DNA of 64,000 bases, taken from the NCBI GenBank assembly GCA_038087875.1, contig JAXLNO010000548.1, positions 62,001 through 126,000 on the forward strand, written 5' to 3'. The position numbers and the translations under genes are program-made. Source of the stretch: Malacoraja senta. Lineage: Eukaryota. Numbering within the stretch: the first letter of the stretch is position 1; the number at the start of each line of letters is the position of its first letter. Below the pieces are notes generated by a model that saw only the letters and a program-made list of their open reading frames with translations, did no database searches and was not told where the DNA came from. This document shows positions 12,290 through 55,717 of the stretch, piece after piece.

Positions 12290-12815
12290 GGAGAAATAAA
12301 AAGATCATCCCTCATGTTCTGAACTTTGACTCACTTCATAAGTCAAAGGTGCAGAATTTGGTTGTTCAGCCCATCGAGTTTACTCCACAATTTAATCATG
12401 GCTGACCTATCGTTCCCTCTCAGTGCCGTTCTCCTGTCATCTCCCTGTGACCTTTGACACTCTTACAAATCGGGCGGCATTTTCTGTTTTTGTATTCCAG
12501 TCCTCTTGATATAAATCACCTTCCTGACTACCGATTCAATTTGCAAATTAACCTTTTAGGAGTCCTGCACCAACACTCCCATGTCACTGTGTGCCTCCGA
12601 TTTCTGGATTCTCTCTCCATTTGTAAAATAATCTACGCCTTTATTCTTATTACCAAAATGCATGTCTCCACACTTTGCTATACTGGATTTCATCTGCCAC
12701 TTCTCTGCCCACTCTCCTAACCCGAACAAGTCCTTCTGCAAAGTCCTTGCATCCTCTACACTGCCTGCCCCTCCACCTATTTTAGCATCATCTGCAAACT
12801 TGGCCACATCACTAC
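12290..12815 (-). mobile_element. CR1 LINE fragment
   Basis: VAKFADDAKIGG..LQKDL..LGEWAEKWQM. Confidence 0.85.
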
Positions 12816-13064
12816 TAAACAACATAAACGTGACGACCGCACGTTTGGAGCTAAGAGTTGTCACTCAGTCAATAGCAAAATCCACAGTGTGTGCTAATCT
12901 TTTAATGATTTTGCATTGTACTAGTGCCTCGCTCTCTTCCCACATTTCAGAATCAGATCAATCAGAATCAGAATCACACTTTATTCGCCAAGTATGTTTT
13001 GCAACATACGAGGAATTTGGCCATAAACTTGAACCTGTCAAACAATGCACTTTGTGTAGGATAG

Positions 13065-13965
13065 AACTGCAGATGCTGGTTTAACTCGAAGGTAGACACA
13101 AAATGCTGGAGTAACTCAGCAGGCCAGCAGCATCTCTGGAGAGAAGGAATGGGCGACCTATCGGGTCGAGACCCTTCTTCAGACTGATGTCAGGGGAGTT
13201 GATGGGACAAAGATAGAATGTAGTTGAAGACACTAAGACTAGTGGAAGAACTGGGAAGGGGGAGGGGATAGAGAGGGAAAGCAAGGGCAATTTAAAGTTA
13301 GAGAAGTCAATGTTCATACCGCTGGGGTGTAAACTACCCAAGTGAAATATGAGGTGCTATTCCTCCAATTTGCACTGGGCCTCACCCTGACAATGGAGGA
13401 GGCCCAGGACAGAAAGGTCAGATTGTGAATGGGAGGGGAAGTTGAAGTGCTGAGCAACCAGGAGATCAGGTAGGTTAAGATGGACAGAGCGGAGTAGTTC
13501 AGTGAAATGATTGCCGAGCCTGTGCTTGGCCTCACTGATGTAGAGAAGTTGACACCTGCAACTGCGGATACAGTAGATGAGGTTGGAGGAGGTGCAAGTG
13601 AACCTCTGCCTCACCTGGAAAGACTGTTTGGGTCCTTGGATGGAGTCGAGAAGGGAGGGAAAGGGACACGTGTTGCATCTCCTGCGGTTGCAGGGGAAAG
13701 TACCTGGGGAGGGGGTGGTTTGGGTGGAAAAGGACGAGTTGACCAGGGAATTTCGGAGGGAATGGTCTCCACGGAAAGCAGAAAGAGGTGGAGATGGGAA
13801 GATGTGGCCAGTATTGGGATCCTGTTGGAGGTGGCAAAAAATGATGGAGGATCATATGCTGTGCGACGGCTGATGGGGTGGAAGGTGAGGATAAGGGGGA
13901 CTCTGTCCTTGTTATGAATGTGGGGGGAAGGGAGAGCAAGAGCGGAGCAGCGAGGAAACCCTAGT
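13065..13965 (-). mobile_element. Penelope-like element 3' part: linker + GIY-YIG + terminal repeat
   Basis: PLILTFHPISRR, RQRFTCTSSNLIYCIRSCRCQLLYISEAKHRLGNHF..HFN, GSLHPSGMNIDFSNF. Confidence 0.88.
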
Positions 13966-14257
13966 GAATGCCTCGCTCCTGTTTGTTTTACACGAGTTAA
14001 AATCAGTTTAAACCAATATCTGTAGTTCCTTCTTCCACAAAGGAAACGGGGCATTGTGCAAATCAATGCAGAAATTCCAGTCTGGATTGTACTGAAACAG
14101 TGGAGATTAAACCCTTTTAACGTCCGTCCGCATGAACCATGAATCAGACTGAATGTGTATTGCGCGCTTTTTTAAACTCAGTCGCCTCCGGTCAAGATTG
14201 AGATAAAGCCAAGACGCTTTTAGCCAGTAGTGAATAAAATGAGTATCATTAACTTAC

Positions 14258-14309
14258 CTGCTTGAGCCCCTTGTACGCGGAAGAAACTCAACAAGATGAA
14301 CAGAATCAT
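14258..14309 (-). CDS. Leader exon of a second MHC-like gene, MILFILLSFFRVQGAQA; downstream exons not found in the window
   Basis: ATG, 17 codons + 1 nt (52 nt, the same size and phase as exon 1 of the complete gene), consensus donor CAG|GTAAGT. The peptide aligns with MLLFTLLNTYGVATVSS and is preceded by a homologous promoter module. Confidence 0.65.
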
Positions 14310-14383
14310 TTCACGCACAACCTCACGCATCAACAGCAGCAACTGAGCCAAACTTCACCAACATCAAAGCAGGATCTCATCAT

Positions 14384-19827: not shown

Positions 19828-20200
19828 AGGTCCTTGGATGGAGTTAAGGGGGGAGGTAAAGCGACAAGTGTAGCATTTCCTGCAGTTGCAAGGGAAAGTA
19901 CCAGGGGAGGGAGTGGTTTGGGTGGGAAGGGACAAATTGACCAGGGAGTTACAGAGGGTGCAGTCTCTTCAGAAAGCTGAAAGGGGAGAAGATGAGAAGA
20001 TGTGGCCAGTGATGGGATCCCGTTGGAGGTGGCGAATATGTCGGAGGATTATCTGTTGTATGTGACGGCTGGTAGGGTGTAATGTGAGGACAAGGGGGAC
20101 TTGTCACGAGTGGGGGGATGGGGAGTGAGAGCGGAGCAACGAGATATAGAAGAGACCCTGCTGAGAGCCTCATCTACAGTCGAAGAGAAGAAGCCCCGTT
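19828..20200 (-). mobile_element. Penelope-like fragment, inverted relative to the adjacent copy
   Basis: Homologous to the minus-strand PLE at 13.2-13.9 kb (ERGFFSSTVDEALSRVS.., PLVLTxHP..). Confidence 0.8.
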
Positions 20201-20204
20201 CCTT

Positions 20205-20860
20205 AACTTCCCCTCCCCTGGCACTTTCACTTGCAACCGCAGGAAATGCTACACTTGTCGCTTTATCTCCCCCCTTGACTCCATCCAAGGGCCTAAGCAG
20301 TCTTTCCAAGTGAGGCAGAAGTTCACCTGCCCCTCCTCCAACCTCATCTATTGCATCCGCTGCTCTAGGTGTCAACTGCTCTACATCGGTGAGACCAAGC
20401 GCAGGATTGGCGATCGCTTCGCCCAACACCTCCGCTCAGTCCGCATTAACCAACCTGATCTCCCAGTGGCTCAGCACTTCAACTCCCCCTCCCATTCAGA
20501 ATCCGACCTTTCTGTCCTGGGTCTCCTCCACGGCCAGAGTAAGACCCTCCGCAAATTGGAGGAGCAGCATATCATTTTTCGCTTGGGTAGTTTACACCCC
20601 AGCGGTATGAACATTGACCTCCATTTTCAGGTAGTCTTTGCTTTCTCCCTCCTTCCCCTCCCCTTCGAAGCTCTCCCACAGCCTACTATTTCCACCTCTT
20701 CCTTTCTTCTTCCCGCCCCACACCCCCATATCAGTCTGAAGAAGGGTCTCGACCCAAAACGTCACCTATTCCTTTGCTCCATAGATGCTGCCTCACTGCT
20801 GAGTTTCTCCAGCATTTTTGTCTACCTTGGATTTTTCCAGCATCTGCAGTTCTTTCTTAA
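20205..20860 (+). mobile_element. Penelope-like element 3' part: GIY-YIG endonuclease + terminal repeat
   Basis: CNRRKCYTC..QKFTCPSSNLIYCIRCSRCQLLYIGETKRRIGDRFAQHLRSV..HFNSPSH, then the terminal repeat with the CTGAAGA..AAAC motif. Confidence 0.9.
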
Positions 20861-21269
20861 ACATGTACTTGTTCCTTGTACTTTTCCTGAGTGTATGGTG
20901 GGGCTAATATGGAGTGAGCTTTACCCAAAATCAAATGCGAGGTAAGAGTTGTTTAATTGTCATATGTATCAACAATAGAACAACAAAATTCTGACTTGCT
21001 GCAGCTTCACCTGCATGTAACTGCAATAACACAGAGATAATATAAAACAACCAATATAACAATAAATTAATAACTGTAATACTGGACTATCATAATAGTG
21101 CAAAAAACTAAATTCATATTACATTCAAAGACAGTCCGTAGATGATCATAGATGCTGAAGTTAGTTTTGTGTGGTGTTGAAGAGCCTGATGATTGCTGAG
21201 AAGAGACTATTCTTGAATCTGGTTGTCACGGTTTTCAGGCTGCTGTATCTTTCCCTATATCTATACTTA

Positions 21270-39486: not shown

Positions 39487-39978
39487 AAGAGCATAGAACA
39501 GTACAGCACAAGAACAGGCCCTTTGACCCACAATGTTTGTGCCGAACATGATGCCAAGACCAATTGTTATCTGCTTGCACATAATCCATATCCATCCATT
39601 CCCTGCATATACATGTGCCTATCTAAAAGTCTCTTAAATGCCACTATCATATCTGCTTCCACCACCACCTCCAGCAGCACATTCCAGTCACTCACCACCC
39701 TTGGCGTAAAACACTTGTCCTGCACATCTTTTTTTAACTTTGCCACTCATTGTAAAGCAATACCTGCTCTTATTTGATATTTCCTTCCTGGGTAAAAAGT
39801 CTGATGGTCTACCCTATCTCTACTCCTCCCAGTTTGATATATTACTGTCAGGTCTCCCCTCAATCCCCGACATTCCAGAGAAAACAATCCAACTGTCCAG
39901 TCTGTCCAACTTCTCCCTGTGGCTAATACCCCACTAATCCAGGCATCATTCCGGTAGACCTCCTCTGCATCCCAAAGG
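39487..39978 (-). mobile_element. CR1 LINE 3' fragment overlapping the last codons of the MHC exon 5
   Basis: GATGCAGAGGAGGTCTACCGGAATGATGCCTGGATTAG..GTTGGACAGACT..GAGGGGAGACCTGA matches other CR1 copies in the window (e.g. 28790-28910, 31490-31610). Confidence 0.85.
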
Positions 39979-40166
39979 AAGCTGATTGTGCTTCATGGTC
40001 CTCTCCTGGTCTCTGCTATTGTCAGCTGGTACCTGTTCATTGAAAGGTTTTCTCTTTTTCCTCTTCTTCCAGCAACCAATTCCAAGGATGATCCCCAGGA
40101 GAATGAGAGGAACAATTACAGCTCCAGTCACGATCCTAATCTTCATATCTTCTTTCACTGCCCTCT
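39946..40166 (-). CDS. MHC class I-like exon 5, connecting peptide + transmembrane + cytoplasmic tail
   Basis: Acceptor ccaacag, phase 1. Translation ERAVKEDMKIRIVTGAVIVPLILLGIILGIGCWKKRKKRKPFNEQVPADNSRDQERTMKHNQLPLGCRGGLPE* has a 22-aa hydrophobic span followed by a basic stop-transfer cluster. An internal donor (GAACAG|GTACCA) cannot be excluded. Confidence 0.8.
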
Positions 40167-40483
40167 CTGTTGGCATATACAGTGGCTTGCAAAAGTATTC
40201 ATACCCCTTGAACTTTTCCACATTTTGTCACGTTACAACCACAAGCGTAAATGTATTTTATTGGGATTTTATGTGATAGACCAACATAAAGTGGCACATA
40301 ATTGTGAAGTGGAAGGAAAATTATACATGGTTTTCAAATTTTTTTACAAATAAAAAACTGAAAAGTGTCGCGTGCGAAAATATTCAGCCCCCTTTACTCT
40401 GATACCCCTAAATAAAATCCAGTGCAACCAATTGCCTTCAGAAGTCACCTTATTAGTAAATAGAGTCCACTTGTGTGTAATCT

Positions 40484-40789
40484 CGGGACGACAGATGGCG
40501 CAATGGGCTAAGTGTTCGGCTGGCAACCGGAAGGTAGCCGGTTCGAATCCCGCTTGGAGTGCATACTGTCGTTGTGTCCTTGGGCAAGACACTTCACCCA
40601 CCTTTGCCTGCGTGTGAATGTGTGTGAATGTGTGTGAGTGATTGGTGGTGGTCGGAGGGGCCGTAGCAGCCACGCTTCCGTCAGTCTGCCCCAGGGTGTG
40701 ACTGAGGAGTGAATGAATAATGCGATGTAAAGCGCCGAGTATTAGAAAGGCGCTATATAAATCCCATCCATTATTATTATTATTATTAT
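40484..40789 (+). mobile_element. tRNA-derived CORE-type SINE with L2-like tail (AFC-like), inserted in the Tc1 5' region
   Basis: Box A TGGCGCAATGG (40496), box B GGTTCGAATCC (40540), CORE-like TGTCCTTGGGCAAGACACTTCAC, tail GTAAAGCGC..GAAAGGCGCTATATAAAT and (ATT)n. TAATCT on both sides is a probable TSD. Confidence 0.85.
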
Positions 40790-40870
40790 TAATCTAATCT
40801 CAGTATAAATACAGCTGTTCTGTGAAGGCCTCAGAGGTTTGTTAGAGAACATTAGTGAACAAACAACATC

Positions 40871-41892
40871 ATGAAGCCAAAGGAACACACCAGACAGGTC
40901 AGGGATAAAGTTGTGGAGAAGTTTAAAACAGGGTTAGGTTATAAATAAATATCCCAAGCTTTGAACATCTCATGGAGCACTGTTCAACCCATCATCCGAA
41001 AATGGAGAGAGTATGGCACAACTGCAAACCTACCAAGACATGGCCGTCCACCTAAACTGACAGGCCGGGCAAGGAGAGCATTGATCAGAGAAGCAGCCAA
41101 GAGGCCCATGGTAACTCTGGAGGAGCTGCAGAGATCCACAGCTCAGGTGGGAGAATCTGTCCACAGGAAAACTATTAGTCGTGCACTCCACAAATCGGGC
41201 CTTTATGGAAGAGTGGCAAGAAGAAAGCCATTGTTGAAAAAAGCCCATAAGAAGTCCCGTTTGCAGTTTGCCACAAGCCATGTGGGGGACACAGCAAACA
41301 TGTGGAGGAAGGTGCTCTGGTCAGATGAGACCAAAATTGAAGTTTTTGGCCTAAATGCAAAACGCTATGTGTGGCGGAAACCTAACACTGCACATCACCC
41401 TGAACACACCATCCCCACTGTGAAACATGGTGGTGGCAGCATTATGCTGTGGGGATGCTTTTCTTCAGCAGGGACAGGGAAGCTGGTCAGAGTTGATGGG
41501 GGAAGATGGATGGAGCCAAATACAGGGCAATCTTGGAAGAAAACCTGTTAGAGTCTGCAAAAGATTTGAGACCGGGGCGGAAGTTCACCTTCCAGCAGGA
41601 CAACGACCCTAAACATACAGCCAGAGCTACAATGGAATGGTTTAGATCAAAGCGTATTCATGTGTTAGAATGGCCCAGTCAAAGTCCAGACCTAAATCCA
41701 ATTGAGAATCTCTGGCAAGACTTGAAAATTGCTGTTCACAGATGCTCTCCATCCAATCTGACTGAGCTCGAGCTATTTTGCAAAGAAGAATGGGCAAAAA
41801 TTTCAGTCTCTAGATGTGCAAAGCTGGTAGAGATATACCCCAAAAGACTTGCAGCTGTAATTGCAGCGAAAGGTGGTTCTACAAAGTATTGA
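40871..41892 (+). pseudogene. Tc1 DD34E transposase pseudogene
   Basis: MKPKEHTRQVRDKVVEKFKTGLGYK* (TAA at 40946), paired-like HTH with GRPPK, then WSDETK, a +2 frameshift near 41500, FQQDNDPKH and [11 protein letters not shown], ending AKGGSTKY*. Confidence 0.93.
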
Positions 41893-44469
41893 CTCAGGGG
41901 GGCTGAATACTTTTGCACGCGACACTTTTCAGTTTTTTATTTGTAACAAAATTTGAAAACCATGTATCATTTTCCTTCCACTTCACAATTATGCACCACT
42001 TTGTGTTGGTCTATCACATAAAATCCCAATAAAATACATTTACGTTTGTGGTTGTAACGTGACAAAATGTGGAAAAGTTCAAGGGGTATGAAAACTTTTG
42101 CAAGCCACTGTATAGTGCATTTTAAACATTTAGTGATCAATAACAACATTGTAATGATTTTATTATCTAAATTAAAGTAGCACTGTTCATATCTAATTAA
42201 AAAGTAATAACGTTTTAGATTTAAGTATTTATACAGAGGATGGATGTGCTTAAAATGATCAATGAAAAATCATTAAGTTCATATTAGCATTGAGGTATTG
42301 AGATTTTATCTGCAGCATTTAATTAAGAATTTAAAGAATCAAGTACGTCAGAAATATATGACTATTTACAGTGTAGAGGTCAACAAGGCCATTTTCTTAT
42401 GTTGATTGTTATTATAGCAAATAAAAGTGAACCCATTTATAGTTGATAAAACTTCAAAGGTTTTAATCTTTGCTGATATTTCAATGATATCTGAGTTTAA
42501 TTTTCTCACATACACATGCTCTCTCTTTCTCTCTCTCTCCCCCTCACTGTCTCACACACATGAGCCCACACACACATACACACATAGGCACACACAGACA
42601 ATAACACTACTGTCTATTTGTACTGACCAGCAATCTTAACCATGTCAGCTTGGCCCTGGTGTGAAGATCTTTGCAGAGGTCTTGTCTGGAACAAATAAGT
42701 CAGCTACAGAACAGGTGCTGCTACTTCAGCCTGATAATATGGCACCACTATTGGTCTTTTGTGTAACTAGCTACTATCAGAAAATTAGCTAGATGCCCAA
42801 GGAAGAAGATAAGAGACCTTGTCCAGGATCAGCCTATCTTGCTTCCACTGTTCCTACATTTGGATGGGTGAGTTAAGGGTGACATAAGAATAATTTTGAC
42901 CATAAGATATTGGAGCGGAATTATGCCTTTCAAGTCCATTGAGTCTACTCCACCATTCAGTCATAGCAGATCTATTTTTTACCGCTAAATCCCATTCTCT
43001 AGCCTTCTCCCTGTAACCTTTGTCACCCGTACTCATCAAGAACCTATCAATCTCTGCTTGAAAAATATGCAATGACTTGACCCACACAGCTGTTTGTATC
43101 AATGAATTCCACAGATTCACCACCCTGTGACTAAAGAGATTCCTCCTCATCTCCATATTGAAGGTAGGTATTTTTATTGTGAGGCTGTGCTAGACTCTCC
43201 CATTACTGAAAACTTCCTTTCCCATCAACTAACCAGGCATTTCATTATCTGGTAGGCAGGGCCGGATTTACATATAAGATGGACAAGCTTCAGTTTAGGG
43301 CCTGGAGATCTAGGAGGGGCTCGCAGAGCCGGATTTACCACTAGGCTTCATAGGCTGAAGCCTGGGGCCCTGAAATATAGGGGGCCTCCGGCCAAGGCAG
43401 GACACCAGCCGTTCAACTCTGGGCGGGGCGGCCCCCCTCTCTATCTCTATCTCCGTCTGTCACTCTCCGTGTCCGGGTCTCCACTCTCCGCTCGCTCCTC
43501 ATCCGCCAGCACGGCCGGCCGCCTTGCACATGCACACTGCTACGGCCAGCACGTCCTCCCCTGCACATGCGCACAACCACAGCCCGCACGTCATCGGCCG
43601 CCCTGCGCATGCGCACTGCCACGGCAACTGGTCGGCGCTGGGCACTTTCTCCCTCGCTTTGAATTGTGGGAGATTTGGCCGCCATTGCTGCCTCGCCGCA
43701 ACCGCTGAAAACTAACACAGAATCACTCCCTGACCCTGGATCAGGAGTATCTCCCTGGAGTAACTCTCGCTTCTGGTTTCCTGATCCTCCATAAATATTC
43801 TAAAAGGAATTTAAACTGGAGGTGGTAGAGGGCTGAACAATAACAGCCTATTGCATTTTATCTGTTTATTTATTGTGTATATATATGGTCTATGGTATAT
43901 AAACACACTGAACTTTTATCTCCTGTTCTGTATTATGTTCACATATTATGTTGTGCTGCAGCAAGCAAGAATTTCATTGTCCTATCTGGGACACATGACA
44001 ATAAAACTCTCTTGACTCTTGACTTGGACTTAAGCAAAAAAGGGTTCTTGGGGAAAAAAGAGGTACCTTAAATTTAGTTGCGTCTGGTTGGGTAACTATG
44101 GTAGGGTGAAGACTATTCCATGCTTTAATTGTGCGGGGGAACTCCATGGAGCAGCCAGCAACTCAGGATAGAAGAAATTGGGTGACGTTTCGGGTAGAAA
44201 CACTTCTTTAGACTCCCTCTGGTTTTAGTGTCTTTAGCTTAATTTGAAGATACAGCGTGGAAACAGGCCCTTCAGCCCTCCGAGTCCACGCCGACTATTG
44301 ATCACCCGTACACTAGTTCTTTCCCACACATTAGCGAAGTAAGTCAAGAGTCAAGAGTTTATTCTCTCACGTCCCAGTTAGAACAATGAAATCCTTACTT
44401 GCAGCAGCACAACAGAATATGTAAACATAGTACTCTGTAAACAATGTTATAAACGAGAAAACAAAACGG

Positions 44470-45050
44470 TGTATATTTATAGCTGTGGTGGAGACAATCG
44501 CTGCTGCTACCCGACCCCCGGAGATTCGGAGGCTACAACCGCGGGTCTGGCGGACGGCAACACCGGAAGCCCGTGGGTCCCCTGGTGGGACACCGCTTTT
44601 CGGGGCATCCGCAGCGGCGACTTCTCCCGCCCGAGTTGCGGGGTTGAAGAGCACCTGGAGGGGGGCTTTACATCACCGCCCCGCGCGGCTTGGAATGGCC
44701 GCCGGACTTTGCGAGCGTGCGCCGGGGCTCTAACACCAAGACGCGGTGCGCGACCCTGCATTAACCGGCGTGGCTTTAATGGCCGCGGGATAATCACCAT
44801 CGCCCGCCGGGGGCTTTGACTTTGACTCTGACATCGGGGGGGTGGGGGGGGGGAGTGCAGTGGAGAGATACGTTTTTTTGCCTTCCATCACAGCGCTGTG
44901 ATGGATGAATGTGTAAATTGTGTTGTGTCTCGGGTCTTCTTCGTTTTGTAATGTATGGCTGCAGAAACGACATTTCGTTTGGACCTCAACGGGGTCCAAA
45001 TGACAAATTTGTCCAAAAGACAAATAAAATTGTATTGTAATTGTATTGTA
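44470..45050 (+). mobile_element. CpG-rich non-autonomous retroelement-like repeat
   Basis: GC-rich body, TTTTTTGCCTTCCATCACAG block shared with 33830-34330 (minus), and a tail ending CAAATAAAATTGTATTGTAATTG. Confidence 0.55.
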
Positions 45051-45149
45051 TATATATATGTGTGTGTGTGTGTGTGCATAGTATATATACCCACACGCAC
45101 ACACACACAATTTCCCTCCTGGGATTAATAAAGTTCTATCGTATAGTAT

Positions 45150-46085
45150 CGTGTGTGTAGGAAGGAACTGCAGATGCTGGTTTAAACTGAAGATAGACAC
45201 ACAAAGCTGGAGTAACTCAACAGGTCAGACAGAATCTCTGGACAAAAGGGAAATATTACGTTTAGGGTTGGTTCTGAAATAGGTTCCTGCACACCTTTGG
45301 AATGTGGAAGGAAACAAGAGCACCCGAAGAAAACCCATGCGATCAAAGTGAAAAGGAGCAAACTCCAAACAGACAACACCCATATTCAGGATCAATTCCA
45401 GGTCTCTGGCACTTTTAGGCAGCAACCTTATGGCCAATGTACAGCCCCATTGTCTTGAACTTAATTAAAACGCCAAGTGTAGCATTTCCTGCAGTTGCAA
45501 TGGAAAGTGCCAGGAGAGGGGGTGGTTTGGGTGGGAAGGGACGAATTGACCAGGGAGTTACGGAGGGAGCGGTCTCTATGGAAAGCCAACAGGGGAGGAG
45601 ATGGGAAGATGTGGCCAGTTGTGGGATCCCATTGGTAGACAAAAAAGCTGTAGAAAATCAGCGGGTGAGGCAGCACCTGTGGAGCGAAGGAATAGACGAT
45701 GTTTCGGGTCGAGACCCTTCTTCAGATTGATGTCGGGGGGGGGGGGGGAATGACATGAAAAATAAAGGAAGAGACGGAGACAGTAGGCTGTGGGAGAGCT
45801 GGGAATGGGAGGGGAAGGAGGGAGAAAGCAAGGACTACCTGAAATTAGAGAAGCCTATGTGCATAGCGCTGGGGTGTAAACTACCCAAGCAAATATGAGG
45901 TGCTGCCCCTCCAATATGCGGTGGGCCTCACTCTGGCCATGGAGGAGGCCCAGGACAGAAAGGTCAGATTCGGAATGGGAGGGGGAGTTGAAGTGCTGAG
46001 CCACCGGGAGATCAGGTTGGTTATTGCGAACTGAGTGGAGGTGTTGTGCGAAGCAATCGCCAAGCCTGCACTTGGTCTCACCGAG
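45150..46085 (-). mobile_element. Rearranged Penelope-like fragments inside the hAT element
   Basis: GETKCRLGDCFAQHLHSVRNNQPDLPVAQHFNSPSH, plus terminal-repeat pieces. Confidence 0.8.
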
Positions 46086-47229
46086 GTTGATCATACGCTG
46101 AATAATCCAACCACATTTTTTTTTGGAAGTGGAAAGAAATAATAGAAATTGCATTCATTGCAACGTGTAAAAAGAGTTAAGATACAGTATTATAATTGTG
46201 CTGCATGTCATTGTGGTATATATCATGTCCTGATTGGTGAATATGTTTAGTTTGTGGCTTTATTTGAAGCAGAAATAATATGTGAATGCTTCATTGAGCA
46301 TAATTCTGACTGGTCGTCCGAGCACATTATCGCACGTGTCATGCAAGCCATCTTAAATAACCACCTAAACTGTCATTTGGCAACTTAAAAAGCTACCAAG
46401 GTTGCCCGGCTGACAACAGAGAAAAGAAATTAAGTGAGAGCCCTGCAAGGTGTATAATATTTTTGACACTGTCATAGGCCTTTCTTACATATGCTGTCAC
46501 AACGCACTGTAGTCTCTAAACAACACTTCAGTAATTTTCCTTGCCCTCCATTTCAGAATAATAGTGTTTTAAGCCAATAACTCGACACTAGCAGTGGCAA
46601 TAAATAAATAAATAAAGCCCAGCTTTCCAGCCCCTTATCTCATTGGCCACGCTCGGCTGCAAATCGGTGTCAATCTGGTGGACCATCTTCCTCTGGTCGT
46701 GGGGGTGGGGGATTGGGGGGGGGCCTCACAAGTGGAACAGCTTAGGGCCTCTCTTCATCTAAATCCGGCCCTGCTGGTAGGTTTCAATGAGATTCCCACC
46801 TCATCCTTCTAAATCCCATGAGCACAGGCACAGAGACTTCAAACACTCCTCATACGTTAAATCAATCATCCCCAGGACATACATCCTCTCGACCCTCTCC
46901 AAAGCCAGCACATCCTTTCTAATATGGAGCCCAAAACTGCTCACAATATTCCAAATGTGTCTTCACCAGTGCCCGATAAATCCTCAGCATTATATCATTG
47001 TTTTTATATTCTACGCCCCCCGAAATGAATGCTGGCATTGCATTTGCCTTACTTACCACTGACTCAATCTGCAAATGAACTATTTGGGAATCCTGCACTA
47101 GTACTCCCACTTTGTAGCTCAGGTTTCTCAATTCTCTCCCCATTTAGAAAATAGTCTATGTCTTTATTCCGACTGCCAACATGTAAAACCAGACACTTGC
47201 TACACTGTATTCCATTTGGCTCTGCTTTG

Positions 47230-47873
47230 CCCACTCGGTGGAACTGCTGCCTTACAGCGCCAGAGACCCGGTTCAATTCTGACTACGGGTCCCGTCTGTA
47301 CAGAGTTTTGTACCTTCTCCCCGGGACTTGCGTGGGTTTTGCCTGGATCTCCGGTTTCCTCACTCAGTCCAAAGACATACAGGTTTGTAGGTTAATTGGC
47401 TTGGTATAATTGTAAATTGTCCCCTAATAAGTAAGATAATGTAAGTGTGCAGGGATCGCTGGTTGACACAGACTCGGTGGGCTGAAGGGCCGGTTTCTGC
47501 GCTGTATCTCTTAAACTAAAACCACATTCCATTGACTATCAATAATTATGAGCAATTAGATAACCACAAATTAATAATGGGTGGCACAGTGGCGTAGCGG
47601 TAGAGCTGCTGCCTTACTGCACCAGAGACCTGGGTTTGATCCTGACTACAGGTGCTGTCTGCAAGGACATTGTATGTTCTCCCTGTGACTGCGTGGGTTT
47701 CCTCCCACACTACAAAGACATACAGGTTTGTAGGTTACTTGGCTTAGGTAAAATTGTAAATTGTCCGTACTGTGTAGGTTAGTGTAAATGTATGGGTTGA
47801 TCACTATTCAGCGAGGACTCAGTGAGCTGAGGGGCCTGTATCTGCAGCATATCTCTAAAGCCTAAAGTCTAAA
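47230..47873 (+). mobile_element. Two tandem HE1/V-SINE-like SINEs just downstream of the alpha3 exon
   Basis: Copies at about 47230-47520 and 47579-47873. Confidence 0.8.
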
Positions 47874-47967
47874 TCCACAGCTTAGTTAAGAGTGTGAGTT
47901 GAGACTGTTATCTCAGTCCAGGAGGTTTATGGTCTCAAGTGATCAGCCTCATTGACTTGCCACTTAC

Positions 47968-48240
47968 CCTGTGGAACATTGACTCCCTGCAGCAGAGTTG
48001 CATGTTCGATGTAACAGGAGAATTTTGCCACATCTTCTCTATTCAGTTGAATTGTATTCTTCAGCTGGTAAGTCCCATCCCAATTGGGCAACAGATCACT
48101 GGATTCAGACTCATGGACCCCCTCACCATCTCTCAGCCACGTTACATCAATGGCCCGTGGCTAGAAGCCTGTGACAAGGCAGGAGAGTCTCAGTGATTGC
48201 GACCCATCACGTTTAATCCCAATAAACACCTCAGGGGTTT
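47968..48240 (-). CDS. MHC class I-like exon 4, alpha3 Ig-C1 domain with an in-frame stop
   Basis: Acceptor ttgcag, donor G|GTAAGT, 273 nt. Translation ETPEVFIGIKRDGSQSLRLSCLVTGF*PRAIDVTWLRDGEGVHESESSDLLPNWDGTYQLKNTIQLNREDVAKFSCYIEHATLLQGVNVPQ contains C1-set motifs LSC.VTGF(Y)P, W, DGTYQ and C.I.H. Confidence 0.93.
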
Positions 48241-49054
48241 CTGCAAGTGTAAGAAGAGTCAGAATCAGTGAAGACATGAACAAAAGCCTTCAATTGTAAG
48301 ATCACTGCAACTCACCACTTTCCCAATCAGAGTTTTTTCTCTGGCTGAACTAAGTTTTCAGCCTAGACCCAAAATGCTGGAATAACTCAGCAGGTCAGGC
48401 AGCATTCTGGAGAGAAGGAATGCCCAGAGATGCTATCTGACCCACTGAGTTACACCAACATCTTCTATCTTCAGTGTAAACCAGCATCTGCAGTTCTATC
48501 TTGCACAAAGTTTACAGCCTTTTCTCTTTTCATTTTGCATTTCTGGCAAAACAACAAAACATTTAGCTTTAATATCACTGACATGCTCCTTATCTTAGCT
48601 CCAGACTTTAACTGACAGCACAGATGAAAGGGGAATGCAGGCCCAATGGAGGAGTATAACTCACCATTGGGATTGATACTGTAGACATGATTGCTTCTAC
48701 CTGTTCATGAATCTCTGCTGAATAATAACACTAAATATTCCAAGAGGGAATGGGAGGAAGAAGTTCTTCAAATAGAGAACTGTTGGAAATTGAATGTCAC
48801 CATCCCAAGGAGTAATAGAGGCAAATAGAGAATCTGATTGGGTTTCTGATCAGTTCAGCAACAGACCCTTCAGGCCACAAGGTCGGTGCTAAACATAAGA
48901 CCAAGATACATATTCCTCCATTTCCTGAATATCTATATGACTGTGGATAAAGGACACTGGTACAATATTTATCTTTCACTTGCACTTCCTACCCACTGGT
49001 TCCATCTAAGAGGCACGTTGCCAGACAATTTACTGATACCCACGTTGTAGAACA

Positions 49055-49345
49055 GGGTGGCGAAGCGGTGGAGCTACTGCCTTACAGCGCCAGAGACCTG
49101 GGTTTGTTACTAACTACGGGTGCTTGTCTTTACAGAGTTTGTACGTTCTCCCTGTGACCTGCGTGGGTTTTATCCGAGATCTTCGGTTTCCCCTCACACT
49201 CGAAAGACGTACAAATTTGTAGGTTAATTGGATTGGTATAAATGCAAATTGTCCCTAGTGTGTGTAGGATAGTGTTAGTGTGCGGGCATGGCTGGTCGGT
49301 GCGGTCTCGGTGGGTTTCCGCGCTGTATCTCTAAACTAAACTAAA
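49055..49345 (+). mobile_element. HE1/V-SINE-like SINE in MHC intron 3
   Basis: Head, V-core and tail present. Confidence 0.85.
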
Positions 49346-49444
49346 TAATTACTCAAGTGACAGCCTGAAGTGCATGATATTTCCCACCTGATCTATCCAG
49401 AGGATATCCTCTGGCCCATCAGTCAGAGTGCCTACGTCGTGTAC

Positions 49445-49720
49445 CTCTCCTCTGTAGTGCTTCTTGTCCACACTCCAGATATATCCGCAGCCACTTCACA
49501 CAGTCCTTCTCCAGGAGATCTTTAAAATACTTGTTCATGAAGGTGTTGACGTTCCACCGATCTGCTAGCATCTGGAAATCTGGACGTAGTGCAATCCAGC
49601 GCATTCTGTCCTTGTCAAAAGCACAGGCATCCTCCCCATCATAACCCAATCTGACAAACCCATCAGTGGAATTGTCACTGTCCACTTCACAGCCGCAGAA
49701 ACCCTGCACAAAGCAAACAG
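49445..49720 (-). CDS. MHC class I-like exon 3, alpha2 domain
   Basis: Acceptor ccccag, donor G|GTACAC, 276 nt. Translation TVCFVQGFCGCEVDSDNSTDGFVRLGYDGEDACAFDKDRMRWIALRPDFQMLADRWNVNTFMNKYFKDLLEKDCVKWLRIYLECGQEALQRR contains GCE, YDGED and C..WL..YL motifs. Confidence 0.95.
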
Positions 49721-50789
49721 CTGGGGCTGAGGTAGGGGTGGAGGATTTGTGTTGGGGAGAGTGGATGGAAGGGAGAGGCAATTTACAAATCAGTTCTCAG
49801 CATGGTACAAACAGGCATAACAGAACACAACATGGAGCTGTACAGCACAGGAGCAGGTTTAGCTCAGAGATACAGCGCGGAAACAGGCCCTTCGGCCCAC
49901 CGAGTCCGCACTGACCAGTGATCCCCGCATATTAACACTATCCTACACAGACTACTTTTCTTTTCCAGCTTTCTCCACTCTACCCCATCACTCTAAATGG
50001 TCCTGGTCTCATATGTTTTCTGTCCATTTTTCCACAGCATGCTGCCTGACTCGTTGAGTTCCTCCTGTTTGTTTTAAATTCAGATTGGCAGCATCTGCAG
50101 TTTGCTGTGACTCCATCTTAGCACAATGGATGATCAATGTGGATTCAGTGAGCAGAAGGGCCGGTTTCCATGATGTGTGACTCAATGACCCATGGTCTAT
50201 ATACTGAGGGCATGGACTAACCTCAAGTGTTATGGGGGGGAGCTTTACTGTTGCGGATGTAACACTAAAGGAGTTCTGCTGTGTCAGAAGGGTGGAACTC
50301 AGATTCTGCACTGTCGTACATAAAGAACAGAGGAAGAAGTGCATTGTCAGATGGGCAATGCTACAGAGCCAACAGGTCAGTCTGAAGGTTAAGGCAATGC
50401 AGATGGGAAGTACATCAAGGCTGTTGCACTGTGTGGGATTGCTACACCCTCTGAGGATTGTTGCCAATATTGAGGGGATGCTGGATTAACACAATATTAT
50501 TACTGAGGGAATACCTCATAGTCACCATCAACCAGCTTAAATCAAGATCCCATCTCTAGATGATCAGGCTATAAATAAACTAATGGTTTCTCCCTCATTC
50601 CAGCCCAACAAAACAGATGATCCAATCCATCCACTTATTACTGGTGTTGAATATCAAATGCTTAACCCATAAAGAGACTATCACCAGCCAACTGTTATGA
50701 CTGTGTGTTCAGCAGTTAGGACACATTAAATATAGACGATGGGCCGTGTCTCTATCAAAATGTGATGGAGTAAATGTCTGAAACAGCAT

Positions 50790-51300
50790 CAATGGTGCTG
50801 AAGTGAAAAAGGTTGAGAGTTTCTGGTTCCCCTACTGCCTCAGGAGACTAAGGAAATGCGGCATCTCCAATGACTCTTACAAACTTCTACAAATGTGCCA
50901 TAGAAAGCATACTGACAGGTTGCATCACAACTTAGTTTGGAAAGAGTTCTGCCCAAGACCGCTGGAAATGGCAGAGAGGTGGAGATGTAGCACAGTCGAT
51001 CACACAAACATGATTCCCCACCAGTGAATCCATCTGTATTTCAACTGGTTCAGGAAAGCAGACAACATAATCAAAGATTCATCCCGTTCTGGTCACTCCT
51101 TCTTCCTGCAGAAGGTACGTAAGCATTAAAGCGTGCACCACCAGACTCAGTAACTGTTTCCTCCCCTATGTTATCAGGTTTCTGAACAGTCCTCCCTTAT
51201 GCTAGGGTTCACCTCAACCCCATTGTAGACACTGGACTTTGTCTCTGGCACTGGTACATTACAATGCTGAGAACTACATTCTGCACTCTTTGCTCTACCT
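50790..51300 (+). mobile_element. Rex1/Babar-type LINE fragment in MHC intron 2
   Basis: KKVESF.., YCLRRLRKCG, and CAIESILTGCIT.W.GK-like sequence. Confidence 0.7.
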
Positions 51301-51464
51301 ATTGTACGAGTTTGGTTTGATTGTATTTATGAATAGTTTTCTTTGATGTGATTGACTAACGCAAAAAAAGTGTATCAGAGAATCATGTGTCAACAATAAA
51401 ACTAAAACAAAATCCATCTGTGTCATCACTGGGTGTCTACCCCAGGTCCGCTCACGACACTTAC

Positions 51465-51725
51465 TCGAGATACCATGTTGCTGTTGGTAGACTATCTCAG
51501 CATTTCCTCTGACAATCCCATGAAAACCTGCAACTGTGATGGCCATTGAATCCCAGTGATCCTGCGGGAAAGACTGGGCCATCCATCGCTGTCTGGGAAC
51601 AGCCCGCTCTAGTGTGCTGTCAAAATATGCTATCTGGACGTCATCCAGCATTGCTACCATACTGTACTCAGGCAGCTCATTCAATCCATGGTTCAACAGG
51701 TAGTAAAATGCAAGATGGTGTAAAT
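51465..51725 (-). CDS. MHC class I-like exon 2, alpha1 domain
   Basis: Acceptor ttgcag, donor A|GTAAGT, 261 nt. Translation DLHHLAFYYLLNHGLNELPEYSMVAMLDDVQIAYFDSTLERAVPRQRWMAQSFPQDHWDSMAITVAGFHGIVRGNAEIVYQQQHGIS contains the class I alpha1 motifs PEY/F, D..QI.YFDS, PRQ.WM and WD. Confidence 0.93.
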
Positions 51726-51915
51726 CTGCAATGCATAAACAAAAATAAGTATGATTGTATCATTCACTGAAAATAACTAAGTTATTAATGCTAAAACTGA
51801 TAACAATACAATAACTTTGAATAAGGGAGTCACAAGGACCTGCAGATGCAAGTGCTGGATGAACTCAGTGGGGCAGGCAGCATCAATGATCAGGTGACAA
51901 TTTGGGTCAGGATCC

Positions 51916-52222
51916 TTTAGTTTAGTTTTTAGCTTAGAGATACAGCATGGAAACAGGCCCTTCGTGCGAGTCCACACTGACCAGCAACCCCCACACAATA
52001 ACACTATCCTACACACACTAGGGACAATTTACATTCTAGACCAAGCCAATTAACCTACAAACCTATACGTCTTTGGAATGTGGGAAGAATCCGAACATCT
52101 CGGGAAAAACCCACACGGTAATGGGGAGAATGGACAAACTCCGTACAGACAGCATCCGTAATCAGGATCCAACCTGGGTCTATGGTGCTGTAATCGAGTA
52201 AGTCTACCGCTGCACCACTGAG
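51916..52222 (-). mobile_element. HE1/V-SINE-like SINE in MHC intron 1
   Basis: Family consensus in reverse orientation. Confidence 0.8.
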
Positions 52223-55200
52223 CCTTCTTCAAGAGTTGGCATGATGGGCTCTGATACCTACTCCACCAATTATGGTCGAGGTATTGAATGATCCTACTGG
52301 ATTGTTTCCCATCTTCAAAGATCTATTATTGTCTATCATGTCGATAGGTTCTACTAGTTACAATATTCCAAAATTTGAAGAATATTTTATTATATTAAGA
52401 AACTGGACAATGTCAAGGAGACTTTATAGAATCATAGAGAGGTAAAGTCAAAGAGTCATACAGCAGGGAATCAGGGCCTATGGCTCAACTTGCCACACCA
52501 ACCAACATGCCTCATCTACACTGCCTGTATTTCATCAGTACATAAGTTCTAGGAGAATAATTAGGCCATTCAGCCCATCGGCCATTCAATCATGGCTGAG
52601 CTATCTCTCCCTATCAACCACATTCTCCTGCCTGCACCCCATAACCCTTGAAACCCATACTGATCAAGAATCTGTTAATCTCCACCTGAGAAATATCCAT
52701 TGATGTGGGCTCTACAGCTGACTGAGGCCCATATCCTTATAAGCCTATCCTATCCATGTACCTGATTAAATGTTTCTTAAATGTCGTGATAGTACGCGCC
52801 TGAACTACCTTCTCCGGCAGTTCATTCAGTACACCCACCACCCTTTGTGTAACAATGCTATGCCTCAGGTTCCTATTAAATCATTCCCCCCTCATCTTAA
52901 ACTTATGTCCACTGGGTACAGCACATAAAAGGCCCTTTAGCCCACCAAGTTCGTGGTGACCATCAAACACCTATTTATACCTGTGGTACGCTAACCCTTT
53001 TAATATTTGCCAATCTCCCATTAACACCTCCCTCATCCCCTCCACCAATTCTAATACATATGCATGACCAATTCACACTGGCCAATTTACCTTTCAGCCC
53101 GGCATTTTGGGGACGTGCGGGGAAACTGGAATAACCATAGCAAACACACGTTTGCAGGGGAAAAAAAAAGCCAGGTTGTAAGAGATCAGGATTGAGTCCA
53201 GGTCCTCATAGGCAGCTTCAACACAGCTCATAGAGATGGGGGGGGGGGGGGGGGGGGTGGTGGAGACTGAGATAAACAGGGCCTAAATTGAAACTCGACA
53301 CAAAATACTGGAGTAACTCAGTGGGTCAGGCAGCATCTCCGGAGAAAAGGAAAAGGTGACGTTTCGTGTCGAGACCCTTCTTCAGAATGAGAGTCAGGGG
53401 ACAGAGAACCGAGAGATATGACAAAGTACAATGAAATATATGCACCCCCGACTCTGTCTGATGCAGTGTCTTGACCTGAAACTCCACCTATTCCTTTTCT
53501 CCAGCGATGCTGCCTGACTTGCTGAGTTACTCCAGCCTTTTGTATCTATCTTCGGTGTAAACCAGCATCTGCATCAGCAGTCAGAAGAAGGGTCTCGACC
53601 CGAAACGTCACCCATACCTTCTCTCTAGGGATGCTGCCTGTGCCGCTGAGTTACTCCAGCTTTATTGTCTATCTTCGGTTTAAATCAGCTTCTGCAGTTC
53701 CTTCTTACACATCTGCACTTCCTTCCTACACTTGTGTCAACTGAAACATCACCTAACCATGTTCTCCAGACATACTGCCTGACCTGCTGAATTACTCCAG
53801 TATTTTATGTGTATTAACCAGCATGTGCAGTTTCTTGTTTCCACATGCATAAGCAGTATTTGTTCTGTGATAAAGATTACATGCAGCACACCAGACAGTG
53901 TCAAAGTTCATGTGTTTAAGTGAAGTGAGAAGGGGCCCCGAGGGCAGAGTTAGAAGTGTCTGTTTCAGTGTTACCAGGAGAAACATAAGACGGCTAAGAG
54001 TGGAATACAGTAACGATAAAATCCATGTGGCTTCCCAAAACACTCCACAGCCAAGGATTTTTGTTTTATATGTTATTATTTCAACATGGCCATCACCATT
54101 ATATGGTTTCGGCCCGAAACGTTGCCTATTTCCTTCGCTCCATAGATGCTGCTGCACCCGCTGAGTTTCTCCAGCATTTTTGTGTACCTTCGATTTTCCA
54201 GCATCTGCAGTTCCTTCTTTAACACCATTATATTTACTTTCATTTGATAACAATGGGATGAAACTTTCAGGACGAGTAGGTTTGTAATCTCCAAGCCTTG
54301 ACGAATGTCAGAATAGTTAGAAAGGTACCATTGTGTGGGAAGAAATTGCTCATCAGATTCCCATTCAATCTTTCCCCCCTCAATTTAAACCTATGTCCTC
54401 TGGTTCTCGATTCTGTAATCTGTTGAATATGTTGCCCACTTGAAAATTTCCAGATTGAGATTGATAGATTTTTGTTCATTAAGGGTGTAATGGGCTGGAG
54501 TTCGGCCACAATGTCTGTGCCGAACATGATGTCAAGTTCAACTAAACTCTTCATGCTTGTAGATGATTCATATCCCTCAATTCCCTGCATATCTACGTGC
54601 CTATCCTCAAGCTTCTTAAATCTCATTATCGTCTTCTGGGGAAGTGGTGATGGGGTAATGGATAGGGTCTGCAGGACAGGAAGCATGCAACAAACAACAA
54701 GATGGCAACAACATTAACACAACATTGATTGGTCATTTAATGCAGGCTGAATTTTACCACCATGTGGGTGTCTAACACCAGCTGAGGAAATCTTGGAGAG
54801 GTGGAACACCTACTAATGCAGAAGTCACTTCTTTATTGAAAGTGCACATTACCTGAATTCTGTCTGAGGCATTAGTGCAAGGACAGATTGGACAAACATG
54901 GATTGTTTTCTCTTGTATACTGGACGTTGAAGGGAGACCTGATGAAAGTGCACAACATGGTGAGAGGCACAGACAGAGTGGACAGCCAGAACCTTTTTCC
55001 CAGGGTGGAAATGTTGAAGACCAGAGAACATCACTTTAAGGTTGGAGAAGCAATGTTCAAAGGAGATGAGCGGAGCAAGTTGTTTTATGTGGAGGGTGGT
55101 GGACATCTGTAACGCGCTGCCAGTGGTGGTTGTGGTGATGGTGGCAGATATAACAGTTACATTTCAGAGGCTTTTAGATAGGTACATAGATAGGCAGGGA

Positions 55201-55330
55201 ATGGCCGGATACAGATCACATACAGGTAGAGGAGATTAGTTTAGTTTGTTCGGCACAGACATTGTGGGCCGAAGGTAGACAAAATGCTGAGGTAACAGCG
55301 GGTCAGGCAGCATCTCTGGAGAAAAGGAAC

Positions 55331-55366
55331 GGGTGACGTTTCGGGTCGAGACCCTTCTTCAGACTG
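55331..55366 (-). ncRNA. Minimal hammerhead ribozyme motif in a Penelope terminal repeat (best-preserved copy)
   Basis: CAGT-CTGAAGA-A-GGGTC-TC-GACCC-GAAAC-GTC-ACCC gives the CUGANGA core, stem II, GAAA, a palindromic minimal stem III (AC/GT) and a GUC cleavage triplet. Confidence 0.7.
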
Positions 55367-55665
55367 AAGGACTGAAGGACCTGCTCCTGTGCTGTATTGT
55401 ACTATGTTCTATGTTCATTATTTACATGTATTCAGTTCTTCTGTTCAATGGATTGCCAAGGTAACCATAGTATATATAACTTCCCACAGGAGCCTTTACA
55501 ACTAAGGAAAGACCGTTACCCAAAATTATTAATACATTCAATTCAATCATTCAATTAATACATCCAAGACAATGAACCCAGGGCAAACACAGGCACTGTG
55601 CAACAGTAAATATAATCAGTTTTGTTGTTTCCTCAAAGTTCACAGGTTGAAGCAGTATTGCTTAC

Positions 55666-55717
55666 CAGAGGAGACAGTGGCCACACCGTAAGTGTTCAGT
55701 AAGGTAAAAAGAAGCAT
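55666..55717 (-). CDS. MHC class I-like exon 1, signal peptide MLLFTLLNTYGVATVSS
   Basis: ATG with A at -3, 17 mostly hydrophobic codons + 1 nt, donor G|GTAAGC. Phase 1 matches the alpha1 exon. An in-frame TAG lies 21 nt upstream and the X-Y promoter module lies directly upstream. Confidence 0.8.

What the first reader, a model, noticed from the sequence alone, without database searches (positions are those of the whole stretch)
39946..55717. Divergent non-classical MHC class I gene hidden among repeats, reconstructable from leader to tail
Seen: five exons splice in phase 1 to a 360-aa class I heavy chain, and none appears as a complete ORF in the supplied track. Known: cartilaginous fish carry classical UAA and several non-classical lineages (UBA, UCA, UDA, UEA). 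Inference: this locus is non-classical. I cannot assign the lineage from memory, and it could be a poorly described sub-lineage.
Basis: partly seen in the sequence, partly recalled or inferred. Interest (0 to 1): 0.7.

Follow-up and report, generated by a model that had tools for sequence, protein, structure and literature searches.

The report
Broken skate non-classical MHC-I gene
This is a real five-exon skate gene for a non-peptide-type MHC class I molecule, from an old shark-and-ray lineage related to the crystallised UGA and UFA genes. This copy is cut short by one stop codon, so it is an ordinary broken or null copy of an already annotated gene family.

Summary
They splice in phase 1 into 360 codons. 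Codon 223 is an in-frame TAG (48163-48161) in the alpha3 GFYP motif, so the "360-aa heavy chain" is not an open frame.

The gene is non-classical. It keeps 2 of the 8 classical peptide-end anchors. It falls inside a 100/100-supported lineage with about one gene per species in 12 sharks, rays and a skate. NCBI already annotates these genes as "MR1-like". The closest is a Leucoraja erinacea protein, 92% identical, with the Tyr codon intact.

The nearest named lineages are UGA (PDB 9ch4, 40% identity) and UFA (8gm8). The gene belongs to neither, and the branching order of the three lineages is not resolved (AU p about 0.25). It is not MR1: the Schiff-base lysine position holds Ala.

A UGA-lineage leader exon lies 25.6 kb downstream on the same strand. 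This matches the sawfish gene order, so the gene sits in the MHC class Ib cluster.

A 1.9-kb Tc1 transposon lies 11 nt in front of the TM exon. Substitution counts show no extra decay, so the break is recent, or it is one allele.

This scan has already reported this lineage, broken and intact, several times on other pieces of the same genome.

The parts
55666..55717 (-). Exon 1: ATG plus a 17-aa leader (MLLFTLLNTYGVATVSS) plus 1 nt; donor G|GTAAGC
   Evidence: The same exon is found in L001 (2 mismatches), in Pristis L004 (92% nt) and in Heptranchias L003.
51465..51725 (-). Exon 2: alpha1 domain (261 nt, phase 1/1)
   Evidence: Pfam MHC_I 1.4e-5. PDB 9ch4 (UGA) 2.4e-22. P0001 95% identical, E 3.5e-48.
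49445..49720 (-). Exon 3: alpha2 domain (276 nt, phase 1/1), with the Cys101/Cys164 pair and extra cysteines
   Evidence: Pfam MHC_I 2e-16. PDB MR1 6e-17 and 9ch4 2e-13. The acceptor was chosen because it gives the same length as all orthologues.
47968..48240 (-). Exon 4: alpha3 Ig C1-set domain (273 nt), interrupted by a stop
   Evidence: The 64 residues after the stop match C1-set at 7e-9 and 9ch4 at 6.9e-15.
48161..48163 (-). In-frame TAG at codon 223, in place of the Tyr of the GFYP motif; it lies 193 nt before the last exon junction
   Evidence: Both L. erinacea copies read TAC here. All 12 relatives have Y.
39946..40166 (-). Exon 5: connecting peptide, transmembrane helix, basic stop-transfer stretch and cytoplasmic tail, ending in TGA 39948-39946
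   Evidence: It is collinear with the TM and tail of Pristis P0151 and L. erinacea P0001.
40178..42112 (+). Tc1/mariner transposon (1935 bp, near-identical terminal inverted repeats, frameshifted transposase) inserted at a TA 11 nt upstream of the exon-5 acceptor
   Evidence: It is absent at the same spot in L001. Pfam HTH_Tnp_Tc3_2 7e-26 and DDE_3 2e-11.
14258..14330 (-). Leader exon of the neighbouring UGA-lineage class I gene (MREVVREMILFILLSFFRVQGAQAG, donor GTAAGT); the rest of that gene lies beyond the window start
   Evidence: tblastn with L. erinacea P0011 gives E 4e-10, with 23 of 25 leader residues identical.

Best explanation
The locus is a skate copy of a conserved, single- or low-copy, non-classical MHC class I gene of sharks and rays. 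The gene lies in tandem just upstream of UGA in the MHC class Ib cluster.

Its intact relatives encode a normal class I heavy chain: leader, alpha1/alpha2 platform, Ig-like alpha3, TM helix and a short basic tail. Their groove has lost the peptide-end anchors, and the replacing residues F7, H59, Q84, L143, R146, L159 are invariant across the lineage. By inference from its kinship to UGA and UFA, the intact molecule most likely shows one fixed non-peptide ligand, probably lipid-like, to T or NK-type cells.

The copy in this window cannot do that as assembled. A single C-to-G change turned the alpha3 Tyr codon into TAG, 193 nt before the last exon junction. The message should therefore be removed by nonsense-mediated decay, or at best give a 222-residue fragment without an Ig domain or membrane anchor. 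A Tc1 transposon 11 nt in front of the TM exon may also weaken splicing.

Shown: the exon structure, the stop, the lineage placement, the synteny and the transposon.
Inferred: the ligand type, the decay of the message, the effect on splicing, and whether the stop is fixed in the species.
For: - Exon model and TAG.
- Lineage: the window gene pairs with L. erinacea P0001 (100/100), sits in a batoid subclade (99/93) and in a 13-row lineage (100/100) whose tree follows the species tree. The placement holds for alpha1 (99), alpha2 (98) and alpha3 (88) taken alone.
- Copy number: about one protein cluster per species in 12 species.
- Named anchors: 9ch4 is UGA and is the top structural match (Z 25.4, 40% identity). 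8gm8 is UFA.
- Groove: 2 of 8 classical anchors kept, and the pattern is invariant in all 13 lineage members.
- Synteny: a UGA leader exon lies 25.6 kb downstream on the same strand. In Pristis the two genes are 42 kb apart on the same strand of one chromosome. An L. erinacea UGA protein lies on a contig of the same length (127,421 bp) as the scaffold that carries P0001, presumably the same scaffold.
- Recent break: both L. erinacea copies read TAC. Apart from the TAG there is no frameshift or lost splice site. Branch counts are 9 non-synonymous: 7 synonymous on the window branch and 10: 7 on the intact copy's branch. Pairwise dN/dS is 0.38.
- Tc1 insertion.
Against: - One base decides the whole "broken" reading. 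I have no reads, so an assembly error or a heterozygous null allele cannot be excluded.
- The equal substitution counts fit a working gene as well as a freshly broken one.
- No expression data could be consulted.
- The ligand type rests on kinship with UGA and UFA, which one review says bind lipids, citing a personal communication (PMC12562908). It also rests on anchor loss. It does not rest on any test of this lineage.
- The sister relation to UGA is the best tree (92/73), but it is not significantly better than the alternatives.
Confidence: 0.75

Rival explanations
1. The gene works in this species. The TAG is either a base-calling or assembly error, or one null allele of a polymorphic site, and the other haplotype or most individuals carry TAC.
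For: Everything else is intact: ATG, four GT/AG introns identical to the intact L. erinacea copy, no frameshift. Substitution counts are the same as on the intact copy's branch (9:7 against 10:7). dN/dS is 0.38.
Against: The TAG is what the sequence shows. A second possible hit, the Tc1 element 11 nt from the exon-5 acceptor, is specific to this copy. Earlier notes of this scan report the same stop on other pieces of this genome; I did not check them.
Confidence: 0.2
2. The stop is bypassed by skipping exon 4. The exon is 273 nt and phase 1/1, so the frame is kept. This would give an alpha3-less, membrane-bound alpha1-alpha2 molecule with a new role.
For: Exon 4 is a whole number of codons with the same phase on both sides, so skipping it would keep the frame.
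Against: Nothing points to skipping. The exon-4 splice sites are strong and identical to those of the intact relative. All 12 relatives keep alpha3. By established knowledge, a class I platform without alpha3 would lose its normal beta2-microglobulin contacts.
Confidence: 0.03
3. It is the cartilaginous-fish orthologue of MR1, as NCBI's automatic name for its relatives suggests, and it presents vitamin-B metabolites.
For: Among solved structures, alpha2 matches MR1 best (6e-17). The PDHW stretch of alpha1 is shared with MR1. NCBI names 12 relatives "MR1-like".
Against: The residue that aligns with MR1 position 43, the Schiff-base lysine, is Ala. The aligned chain is the K43A mutant 4lcw. Alpha1 and alpha3 match shark UGA far better than MR1 (2.4e-22 against 4e-6; 6.9e-15 against 2.3e-12). 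A 2025 review lists no MR1 in cartilaginous fish (PMC12562908).
Confidence: 0.02

Closest known systems
[quoted passage not shown]
   Same: It is 92% identical over the ectodomain. It has the same five exons and the same splice sites. Its introns and flanks are collinear with the window at 87-92% nt identity. It has the same TM and tail, including the GCRGGL(P/W)E end.
   Different: It has TAC (Tyr) where the window has TAG, and it lacks the Tc1 element before exon 5. Its first intron is about 9.9 kb against 3.9 kb here. Synonymous divergence is about 0.08, so it is an orthologue in another skate or an old duplicate, not the same locus.
Shark UGA (PDB 9ch4, "shark nonclassical MHC class I, UGA") and its sharks-and-rays lineage
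   Same: It is the best structural and sequence match among solved structures: Z 25.4, 40% identity, alpha1 about 50% identical. It is the sister lineage in the best tree (92/73). It is the tandem neighbour in the genome. Both have L at position 159, a hydrophobic residue at 143 (L here, F in UGA) and a TM plus tail.
   Different: The two clades are separate, each 100/100. UGA keeps Y59 and K146, and most of its members keep Y7, where this lineage has F7, H59 and R146. The order among this lineage, UGA and UFA is not resolved (AU p 0.25-0.26).
Shark UFA (PDB 8gm8, "shark nonclassical MHC class I, UFA")
   Same: It falls in the same wider group of anchor-less non-classical class I genes of sharks and rays (86/71). 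Alpha1 matches it at 2.6e-12.
   Different: It is only about 30% identical. Its alpha2 is much more diverged, and its end is short and hydrophobic with no cytoplasmic tail, where this gene has a TM helix and a roughly 40-aa tail.
Classical class I (shark UAA, PDB 6lup)
   Same: Same fold and domain order. Same disulfide cysteines in alpha2 and alpha3. W147 and Y171 are kept.
   Different: Six of the eight peptide-end anchors are replaced. Alpha1 matches 6lup at only 6e-8. Sequences with classical-type anchors sit in another part of the tree.

Membership tests
MHC class I heavy chain (fold family) | Alpha1/alpha2 platform followed by an Ig C1-set alpha3 domain, a TM helix and a tail, with one exon per domain in phase 1 | tested here: met
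   Pfam MHC_I and C1-set. There are 999 PDB class I chains with Z above 8 for the model of the 92%-identical relative.
MHC class I heavy chain (fold family) | Conserved disulfide cysteines in alpha2 (101/164) and alpha3 (203/259) | tested here: met
   GC(E) and (D)C(V)KWL in alpha2, LSC and FSC in alpha3. These columns are invariant or nearly so in the alignment.
Intact, expressible gene | Open reading frame from ATG to the natural stop | tested here: not met
   TAG at codon 223 (48163-48161).
Classical class I (UAA) | Eight conserved residues that hold the peptide ends (Y7, Y59, R/Y84, T143, K146, W147, Y159, Y171) | tested here: not met
   The window has F, H, Q, L, R, W, L, Y, so 2 of 8 are kept.
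UGA lineage | Falls inside the clade that holds the crystallised UGA-type sequences | tested here: not met
   The UGA clade and this lineage are each 100/100 and exclude each other. Identity to 9ch4 is 40%.
UFA lineage | Falls inside the clade of sequences close to 8gm8 | tested here: not met
   The UFA-type clade (P0021 and P0077; 8gm8 is 52% identical to P0021) is 100/100 and separate.
MR1 | Lysine 43, which forms the Schiff base with the ligand | tested here: not met
   Ala aligns with position 43 of MR1 chain 4lcw.
UCA, UDA and UEA lineages of cartilaginous fish | Clusters with curated reference sequences of these lineages | not tested
   No curated reference sequence could be obtained, and the two defining papers are not held. 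Indirect evidence only. From my memory of the abstracts, UDA keeps 8 of 9 anchors, UEA is multicopy and found in sharks only, and UCA is found in dogfish sharks only. This lineage has 2 of 8 anchors, is single or low copy, and occurs in both sharks and rays. A shark-only multicopy clade in my tree is well separated from it.
MHC-linked class Ib cluster of elasmobranchs | Lies next to other class Ib genes on the MHC chromosome | tested here: met
   A UGA leader exon lies 25.6 kb downstream. In Pristis the two genes are 42 kb apart on CM019888.1. PMC10751288 maps all elasmobranch class Ib genes to the MHC. psmb8, tap and brd2 are not in this window.
Old, decayed pseudogene | Excess of non-synonymous change, frameshifts or lost splice sites on this branch | tested here: not met
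   Counts are 9N:7S on this branch against 10N:7S on the intact relative's branch. There are no frameshifts, and all splice sites are kept.

The most novel reading that the evidence does not exclude
The lineage may be a third, still unnamed member of the UFA/UGA group. It would be an ancient single-copy class I gene, kept since before sharks and rays split, with a groove invariant at the anchor positions and therefore one fixed non-peptide ligand. In this skate it would be caught in the act of being lost, or would segregate as a null allele. That would make the skate a natural knockout for asking what the molecule is for.
Probability: 0.3. Interest if true: 0.5.

Novelty: new member of a known kind. 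Interest (0 to 1): 0.3.

Why it matters
Sharks and rays carry several old non-classical class I lineages whose ligands are only now being worked out; the UFA and UGA structures were released in 2024 and 2026. This gene belongs to a neighbouring lineage that genome pipelines label "MR1-like". Knowing that it is neither MR1 nor UGA nor UFA, that its groove is fixed across sharks and rays, and that it sits in tandem with UGA helps to annotate the class Ib cluster correctly.

The copy itself adds little. It is a broken or null version of a gene that is intact in the nearest sequenced skate, and this scan has already met the lineage several times.

Tried and rejected
- Second class I copy in the window: tblastn with all exon translations found only the one copy of each exon.
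- Long ORFs elsewhere in the window are transposon-derived (Tc1, a GIY-YIG element) or have no Pfam match. Synteny with psmb8, tap and brd2 therefore cannot be read from this window.
- Papers: text searches for the PDB codes 9CH4 and 8GM8 gave nothing useful. Searches for UFA/UGA papers gave only a review and the 2023 MHC map. The two J Immunol papers that define UDA and UEA are not held.
- The multi-domain proteins that scored high with alpha1 (P0002-P0012) are mostly fused teleost gene models (one, P0010, is from the ray Mobula), not shark UEA.
- Species: the UGA leader in the window differs from the annotated L. erinacea (2 of 25) and A. radiata (3 of 25) leaders. I can only say it is a skate closest to Leucoraja.
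- Look-ups of the UGA loci of Heptranchias and L. erinacea failed, because those isoforms are not on record.
- L002, a second L. erinacea locus, holds only alpha2 and alpha3 inside a poor gene model, and is no closer to the window than L001 is.
- An alternative leader ATG at 55776 was rejected. It runs into a stop, has only weak phase-1 donors, and does not match the leader conserved in the lineage.
- The alternative alpha1 donor (51474) and alpha2 acceptor (49726) were rejected because only the chosen pair gives the orthologues' length.
Full report
**Observation.**
The gene lies on the minus strand. Reading the sequence and locating the borders by motif gives five exons:
- leader 55717-55666 (ATG, 17 codons plus 1 nt, donor G|GTAAGC)
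- alpha1 51725-51465
- alpha2 49720-49445
- alpha3 48240-47968
- TM plus tail 40166-39946 (TGA at 39948-39946)

Every junction is phase 1, and every intron starts with GT and ends with AG. The exons sum to 1083 nt, which is 360 codons plus the stop. The introns are about 3.9, 1.7, 1.2 and 7.8 kb. Within the window, 37% of the gene span is repeated elsewhere, and none of the exons is.

The one thing the finding leaves out is decisive. Codon 223 is TAG (48163-48161), at the Tyr of the alpha3 motif GFYP. As assembled, the frame ends after 222 residues.

**Are the exons real?**
Pfam finds MHC_I in alpha2 (2e-16) and more weakly in alpha1 (1.4e-5). It finds C1-set in the part of alpha3 after the stop (7e-9). 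Against solved structures, alpha1 matches 9ch4 at 2.4e-22, alpha2 matches MR1 at 6e-17 and 9ch4 at 2e-13, and alpha3 matches 9ch4 at 6.9e-15.

Where two splice sites were possible (alpha1 donor, alpha2 acceptor), I chose the pair that gives the same length as all relatives. The same five exons, with identical lengths and no gaps from leader to alpha3, are present in the loci of L. erinacea, the sawfish Pristis pectinata and the shark Heptranchias perlo. The leader MLLFTLLNTYGVATVSS is shared with sharks (MLLVTLLNVYCVPTVSS). The TM and tail are collinear with those of the sawfish protein, so no further cytoplasmic exon is needed. No second copy of any exon is in the window.

**What lineage is it?**
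A full HMMER scan of 1.8 billion representative proteins with alpha1 gave one close hit. This was P0001, 95% identical in alpha1. [quoted passage not shown]

Searching with P0001 found one protein cluster per species in Pristis, Mobula, Hypanus, Pristiophorus, Heptranchias, Scyliorhinus torazame, Stegostoma, Hemiscyllium, Mustelus, Cetorhinus and Chiloscyllium, at 54-72% identity. All are named MR1-like. After them, identity drops to about 35%.

In a maximum-likelihood tree of 62 ectodomains:
- the window gene pairs with P0001 (100/100)
- the pair sits with the other batoids (99/93)
- the lineage of 13 rows is 100/100, and its inner branching follows the species tree

The placement holds for alpha1 (99), alpha2 (98) and alpha3 (88) taken alone, so there is no sign of exon shuffling.

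**Naming the neighbours.**
I folded the ectodomain of P0001 (pLDDT 87) and compared it with the PDB. The top match is 9ch4, whose entry title is "Crystal structure of shark nonclassical MHC CLASS I, UGA", with Z 25.4 and 40% identity. A model of P0021, from the next clade out, matches 8gm8, "shark nonclassical MHC CLASS I, UFA", at 52% identity.

The tree therefore reads (UFA, (UGA, this lineage)), with support 86/71 and 92/73. An AU test does not reject UGA+UFA or this lineage+UFA (log-likelihood difference 0.79, p 0.25 and 0.26). I therefore call it a third lineage of the UFA/UGA group, closest to UGA by identity and in alpha1, with the branching order unresolved. This is more cautious than the "UGA-sister" label in earlier notes of this scan.

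A 2025 review lists UAA, UBA, UDA, UEA, UFA and UGA for sharks and rays. Citing a personal communication, it says that UFA and UGA are CD1-like and bind lipids (PMC12562908). The 2023 MHC map places all elasmobranch class Ib genes in the MHC (PMC10751288). I found no name for the present lineage. The papers that define UDA and UEA are not held, so membership in UCA, UDA or UEA was not tested with reference sequences. Indirect evidence speaks against it: anchor pattern, copy number, presence in rays, and separation from a shark-only multicopy clade.

**Groove.**
At the eight classical peptide-end anchors the window gene has F7, H59, Q84, L143, R146, W147, L159 and Y171, so 2 of 8 are kept. This same pattern is found in all 13 members of the lineage, apart from L at 147 in three orectolobiform sharks. 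UGA keeps Y59 and K146, and most of its members keep Y7.

The residue that aligns with MR1 lysine 43 is Ala. The aligned chain, 4lcw, is the K43A mutant. NCBI's "MR1-like" label is therefore a resemblance, mainly in alpha2 and in the PDHW stretch, and not orthology.

A fixed, anchor-less groove in a single-copy gene points to one conserved non-peptide ligand. That it is lipid-like is an inference from UGA and UFA, not a result.

**Synteny.**
At 14330-14258 on the same strand lies an exon encoding MREVVREMILFILLSFFRVQGAQAG, followed by GTAAGT. It matches 23 of the first 25 residues of the L. erinacea UGA-lineage protein P0011. It is the leader of the neighbouring UGA gene, 25.6 kb downstream. 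The rest of that gene lies beyond the window start.

In Pristis the two genes lie 42 kb apart on the same strand of chromosome CM019888.1. In L. erinacea a UGA-lineage protein lies on a contig of the same length (127,421 bp) as the scaffold that carries P0001, presumably the same scaffold. The gene is therefore a tandem neighbour of UGA in the class Ib cluster. psmb8, tap and brd2 are not in this window.

**State of this copy.**
- The L. erinacea locus L001 is collinear with the window from about 33 kb to 55.8 kb. Identity is 87-92% in introns and flanks, 94-97% in the alpha1 to alpha3 exons, 93% in the leader exon and 88% in the TM/tail exon.
- With the same splice sites, L001 reads open from the leader through alpha3.
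- At the stop, both L. erinacea copies read TAC and the window reads TAG, a one-base difference.
- Pairwise dN/dS is 0.38, with dS 0.084.
- With Pristis and Heptranchias as outgroups, the window branch carries 9 non-synonymous changes (the nonsense change included) and 7 synonymous ones. The intact L001 branch carries 10 and 7.

There is thus no extra decay on this branch. The stop is recent, or one allele, or an error.

The stop lies 193 nt before the last exon junction. By the usual 50-55 nt rule, the message should undergo nonsense-mediated decay (inference).

A second lesion specific to this copy is a 1935-bp Tc1/mariner element (40178-42112). It has near-identical inverted ends and a frameshifted transposase, and it is inserted at a TA 11 nt upstream of the exon-5 acceptor. 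It moves the original upstream intron sequence, where the branch point would lie, 1.9 kb away. Whether this harms splicing is not shown.

**Species.**
The window is from a skate. Its UGA leader differs from the annotated L. erinacea and A. radiata leaders at 2 and 3 of 25 residues. Neutral divergence from L. erinacea is about 8-10%. It is therefore another skate species or, less likely, an old duplicated block.

**Earlier notes of this scan.**
I have now identified that second leader as the UGA leader. Follow-up agents have reported the same lineage many times on other pieces of this genome, both broken (stop codon, transposon) and intact. I could not read those pieces. If an intact copy exists in the same genome, this one is a dead duplicate or a null haplotype.

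**Verdict.**
The non-classical reading is right. The lineage is distinct from UGA and UFA, but it is already annotated in a dozen genomes, and its nearest relatives have solved structures. This copy is most likely a recently disabled gene or a null allele.

Noticed in passing
window 14258-14330 (-): This is the leader exon of the neighbouring UGA-lineage class I gene (MREVVREMILFILLSFFRVQGAQAG, donor GTAAGT), 25.6 kb downstream of the studied gene.
   Followed up: partly
window 40178-42112 (+): A Tc1/mariner transposon of 1935 bp. Its terminal inverted repeats show 1 mismatch in about 66 nt. Its transposase is split by a frameshift (ORFs 40961-41551 and 41506-41892). It is absent from the L. 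erinacea locus, so it is a fairly young insertion.
   Followed up: yes
window 20118-20945 (+): A 275-aa ORF with a weak GIY-YIG nuclease match (2.7e-4, just under Pfam's cut-off). It looks like the endonuclease part of a Penelope-like retroelement. A related fragment lies at 45855-46154 (-), inside intron 4 of the gene.
   Followed up: partly
L002 (L. erinacea scaffold JAMYXN010000412.1), locus 10001-14232: L. erinacea carries a second, partial copy of this lineage, with only alpha2 and alpha3 recognisable. NCBI has modelled it as a 263-aa protein padded with intron sequence. It keeps TAC at the GFYP codon and is about 12-14% diverged from both the window and L001.
   Followed up: partly
P0243 cluster (Rhinoraja longicauda, one 41-Mb contig): UGA is described as single or low copy. 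This skate nevertheless has at least ten distinct annotated UGA-lineage proteins on one chromosome, and the sawfish has three. UGA may therefore be expanded in some batoids.
   Followed up: no
L. erinacea, Pristis and Heptranchias all have Phe there. The Cys two residues before Cys101 is conserved across the lineage.
   Followed up: partly
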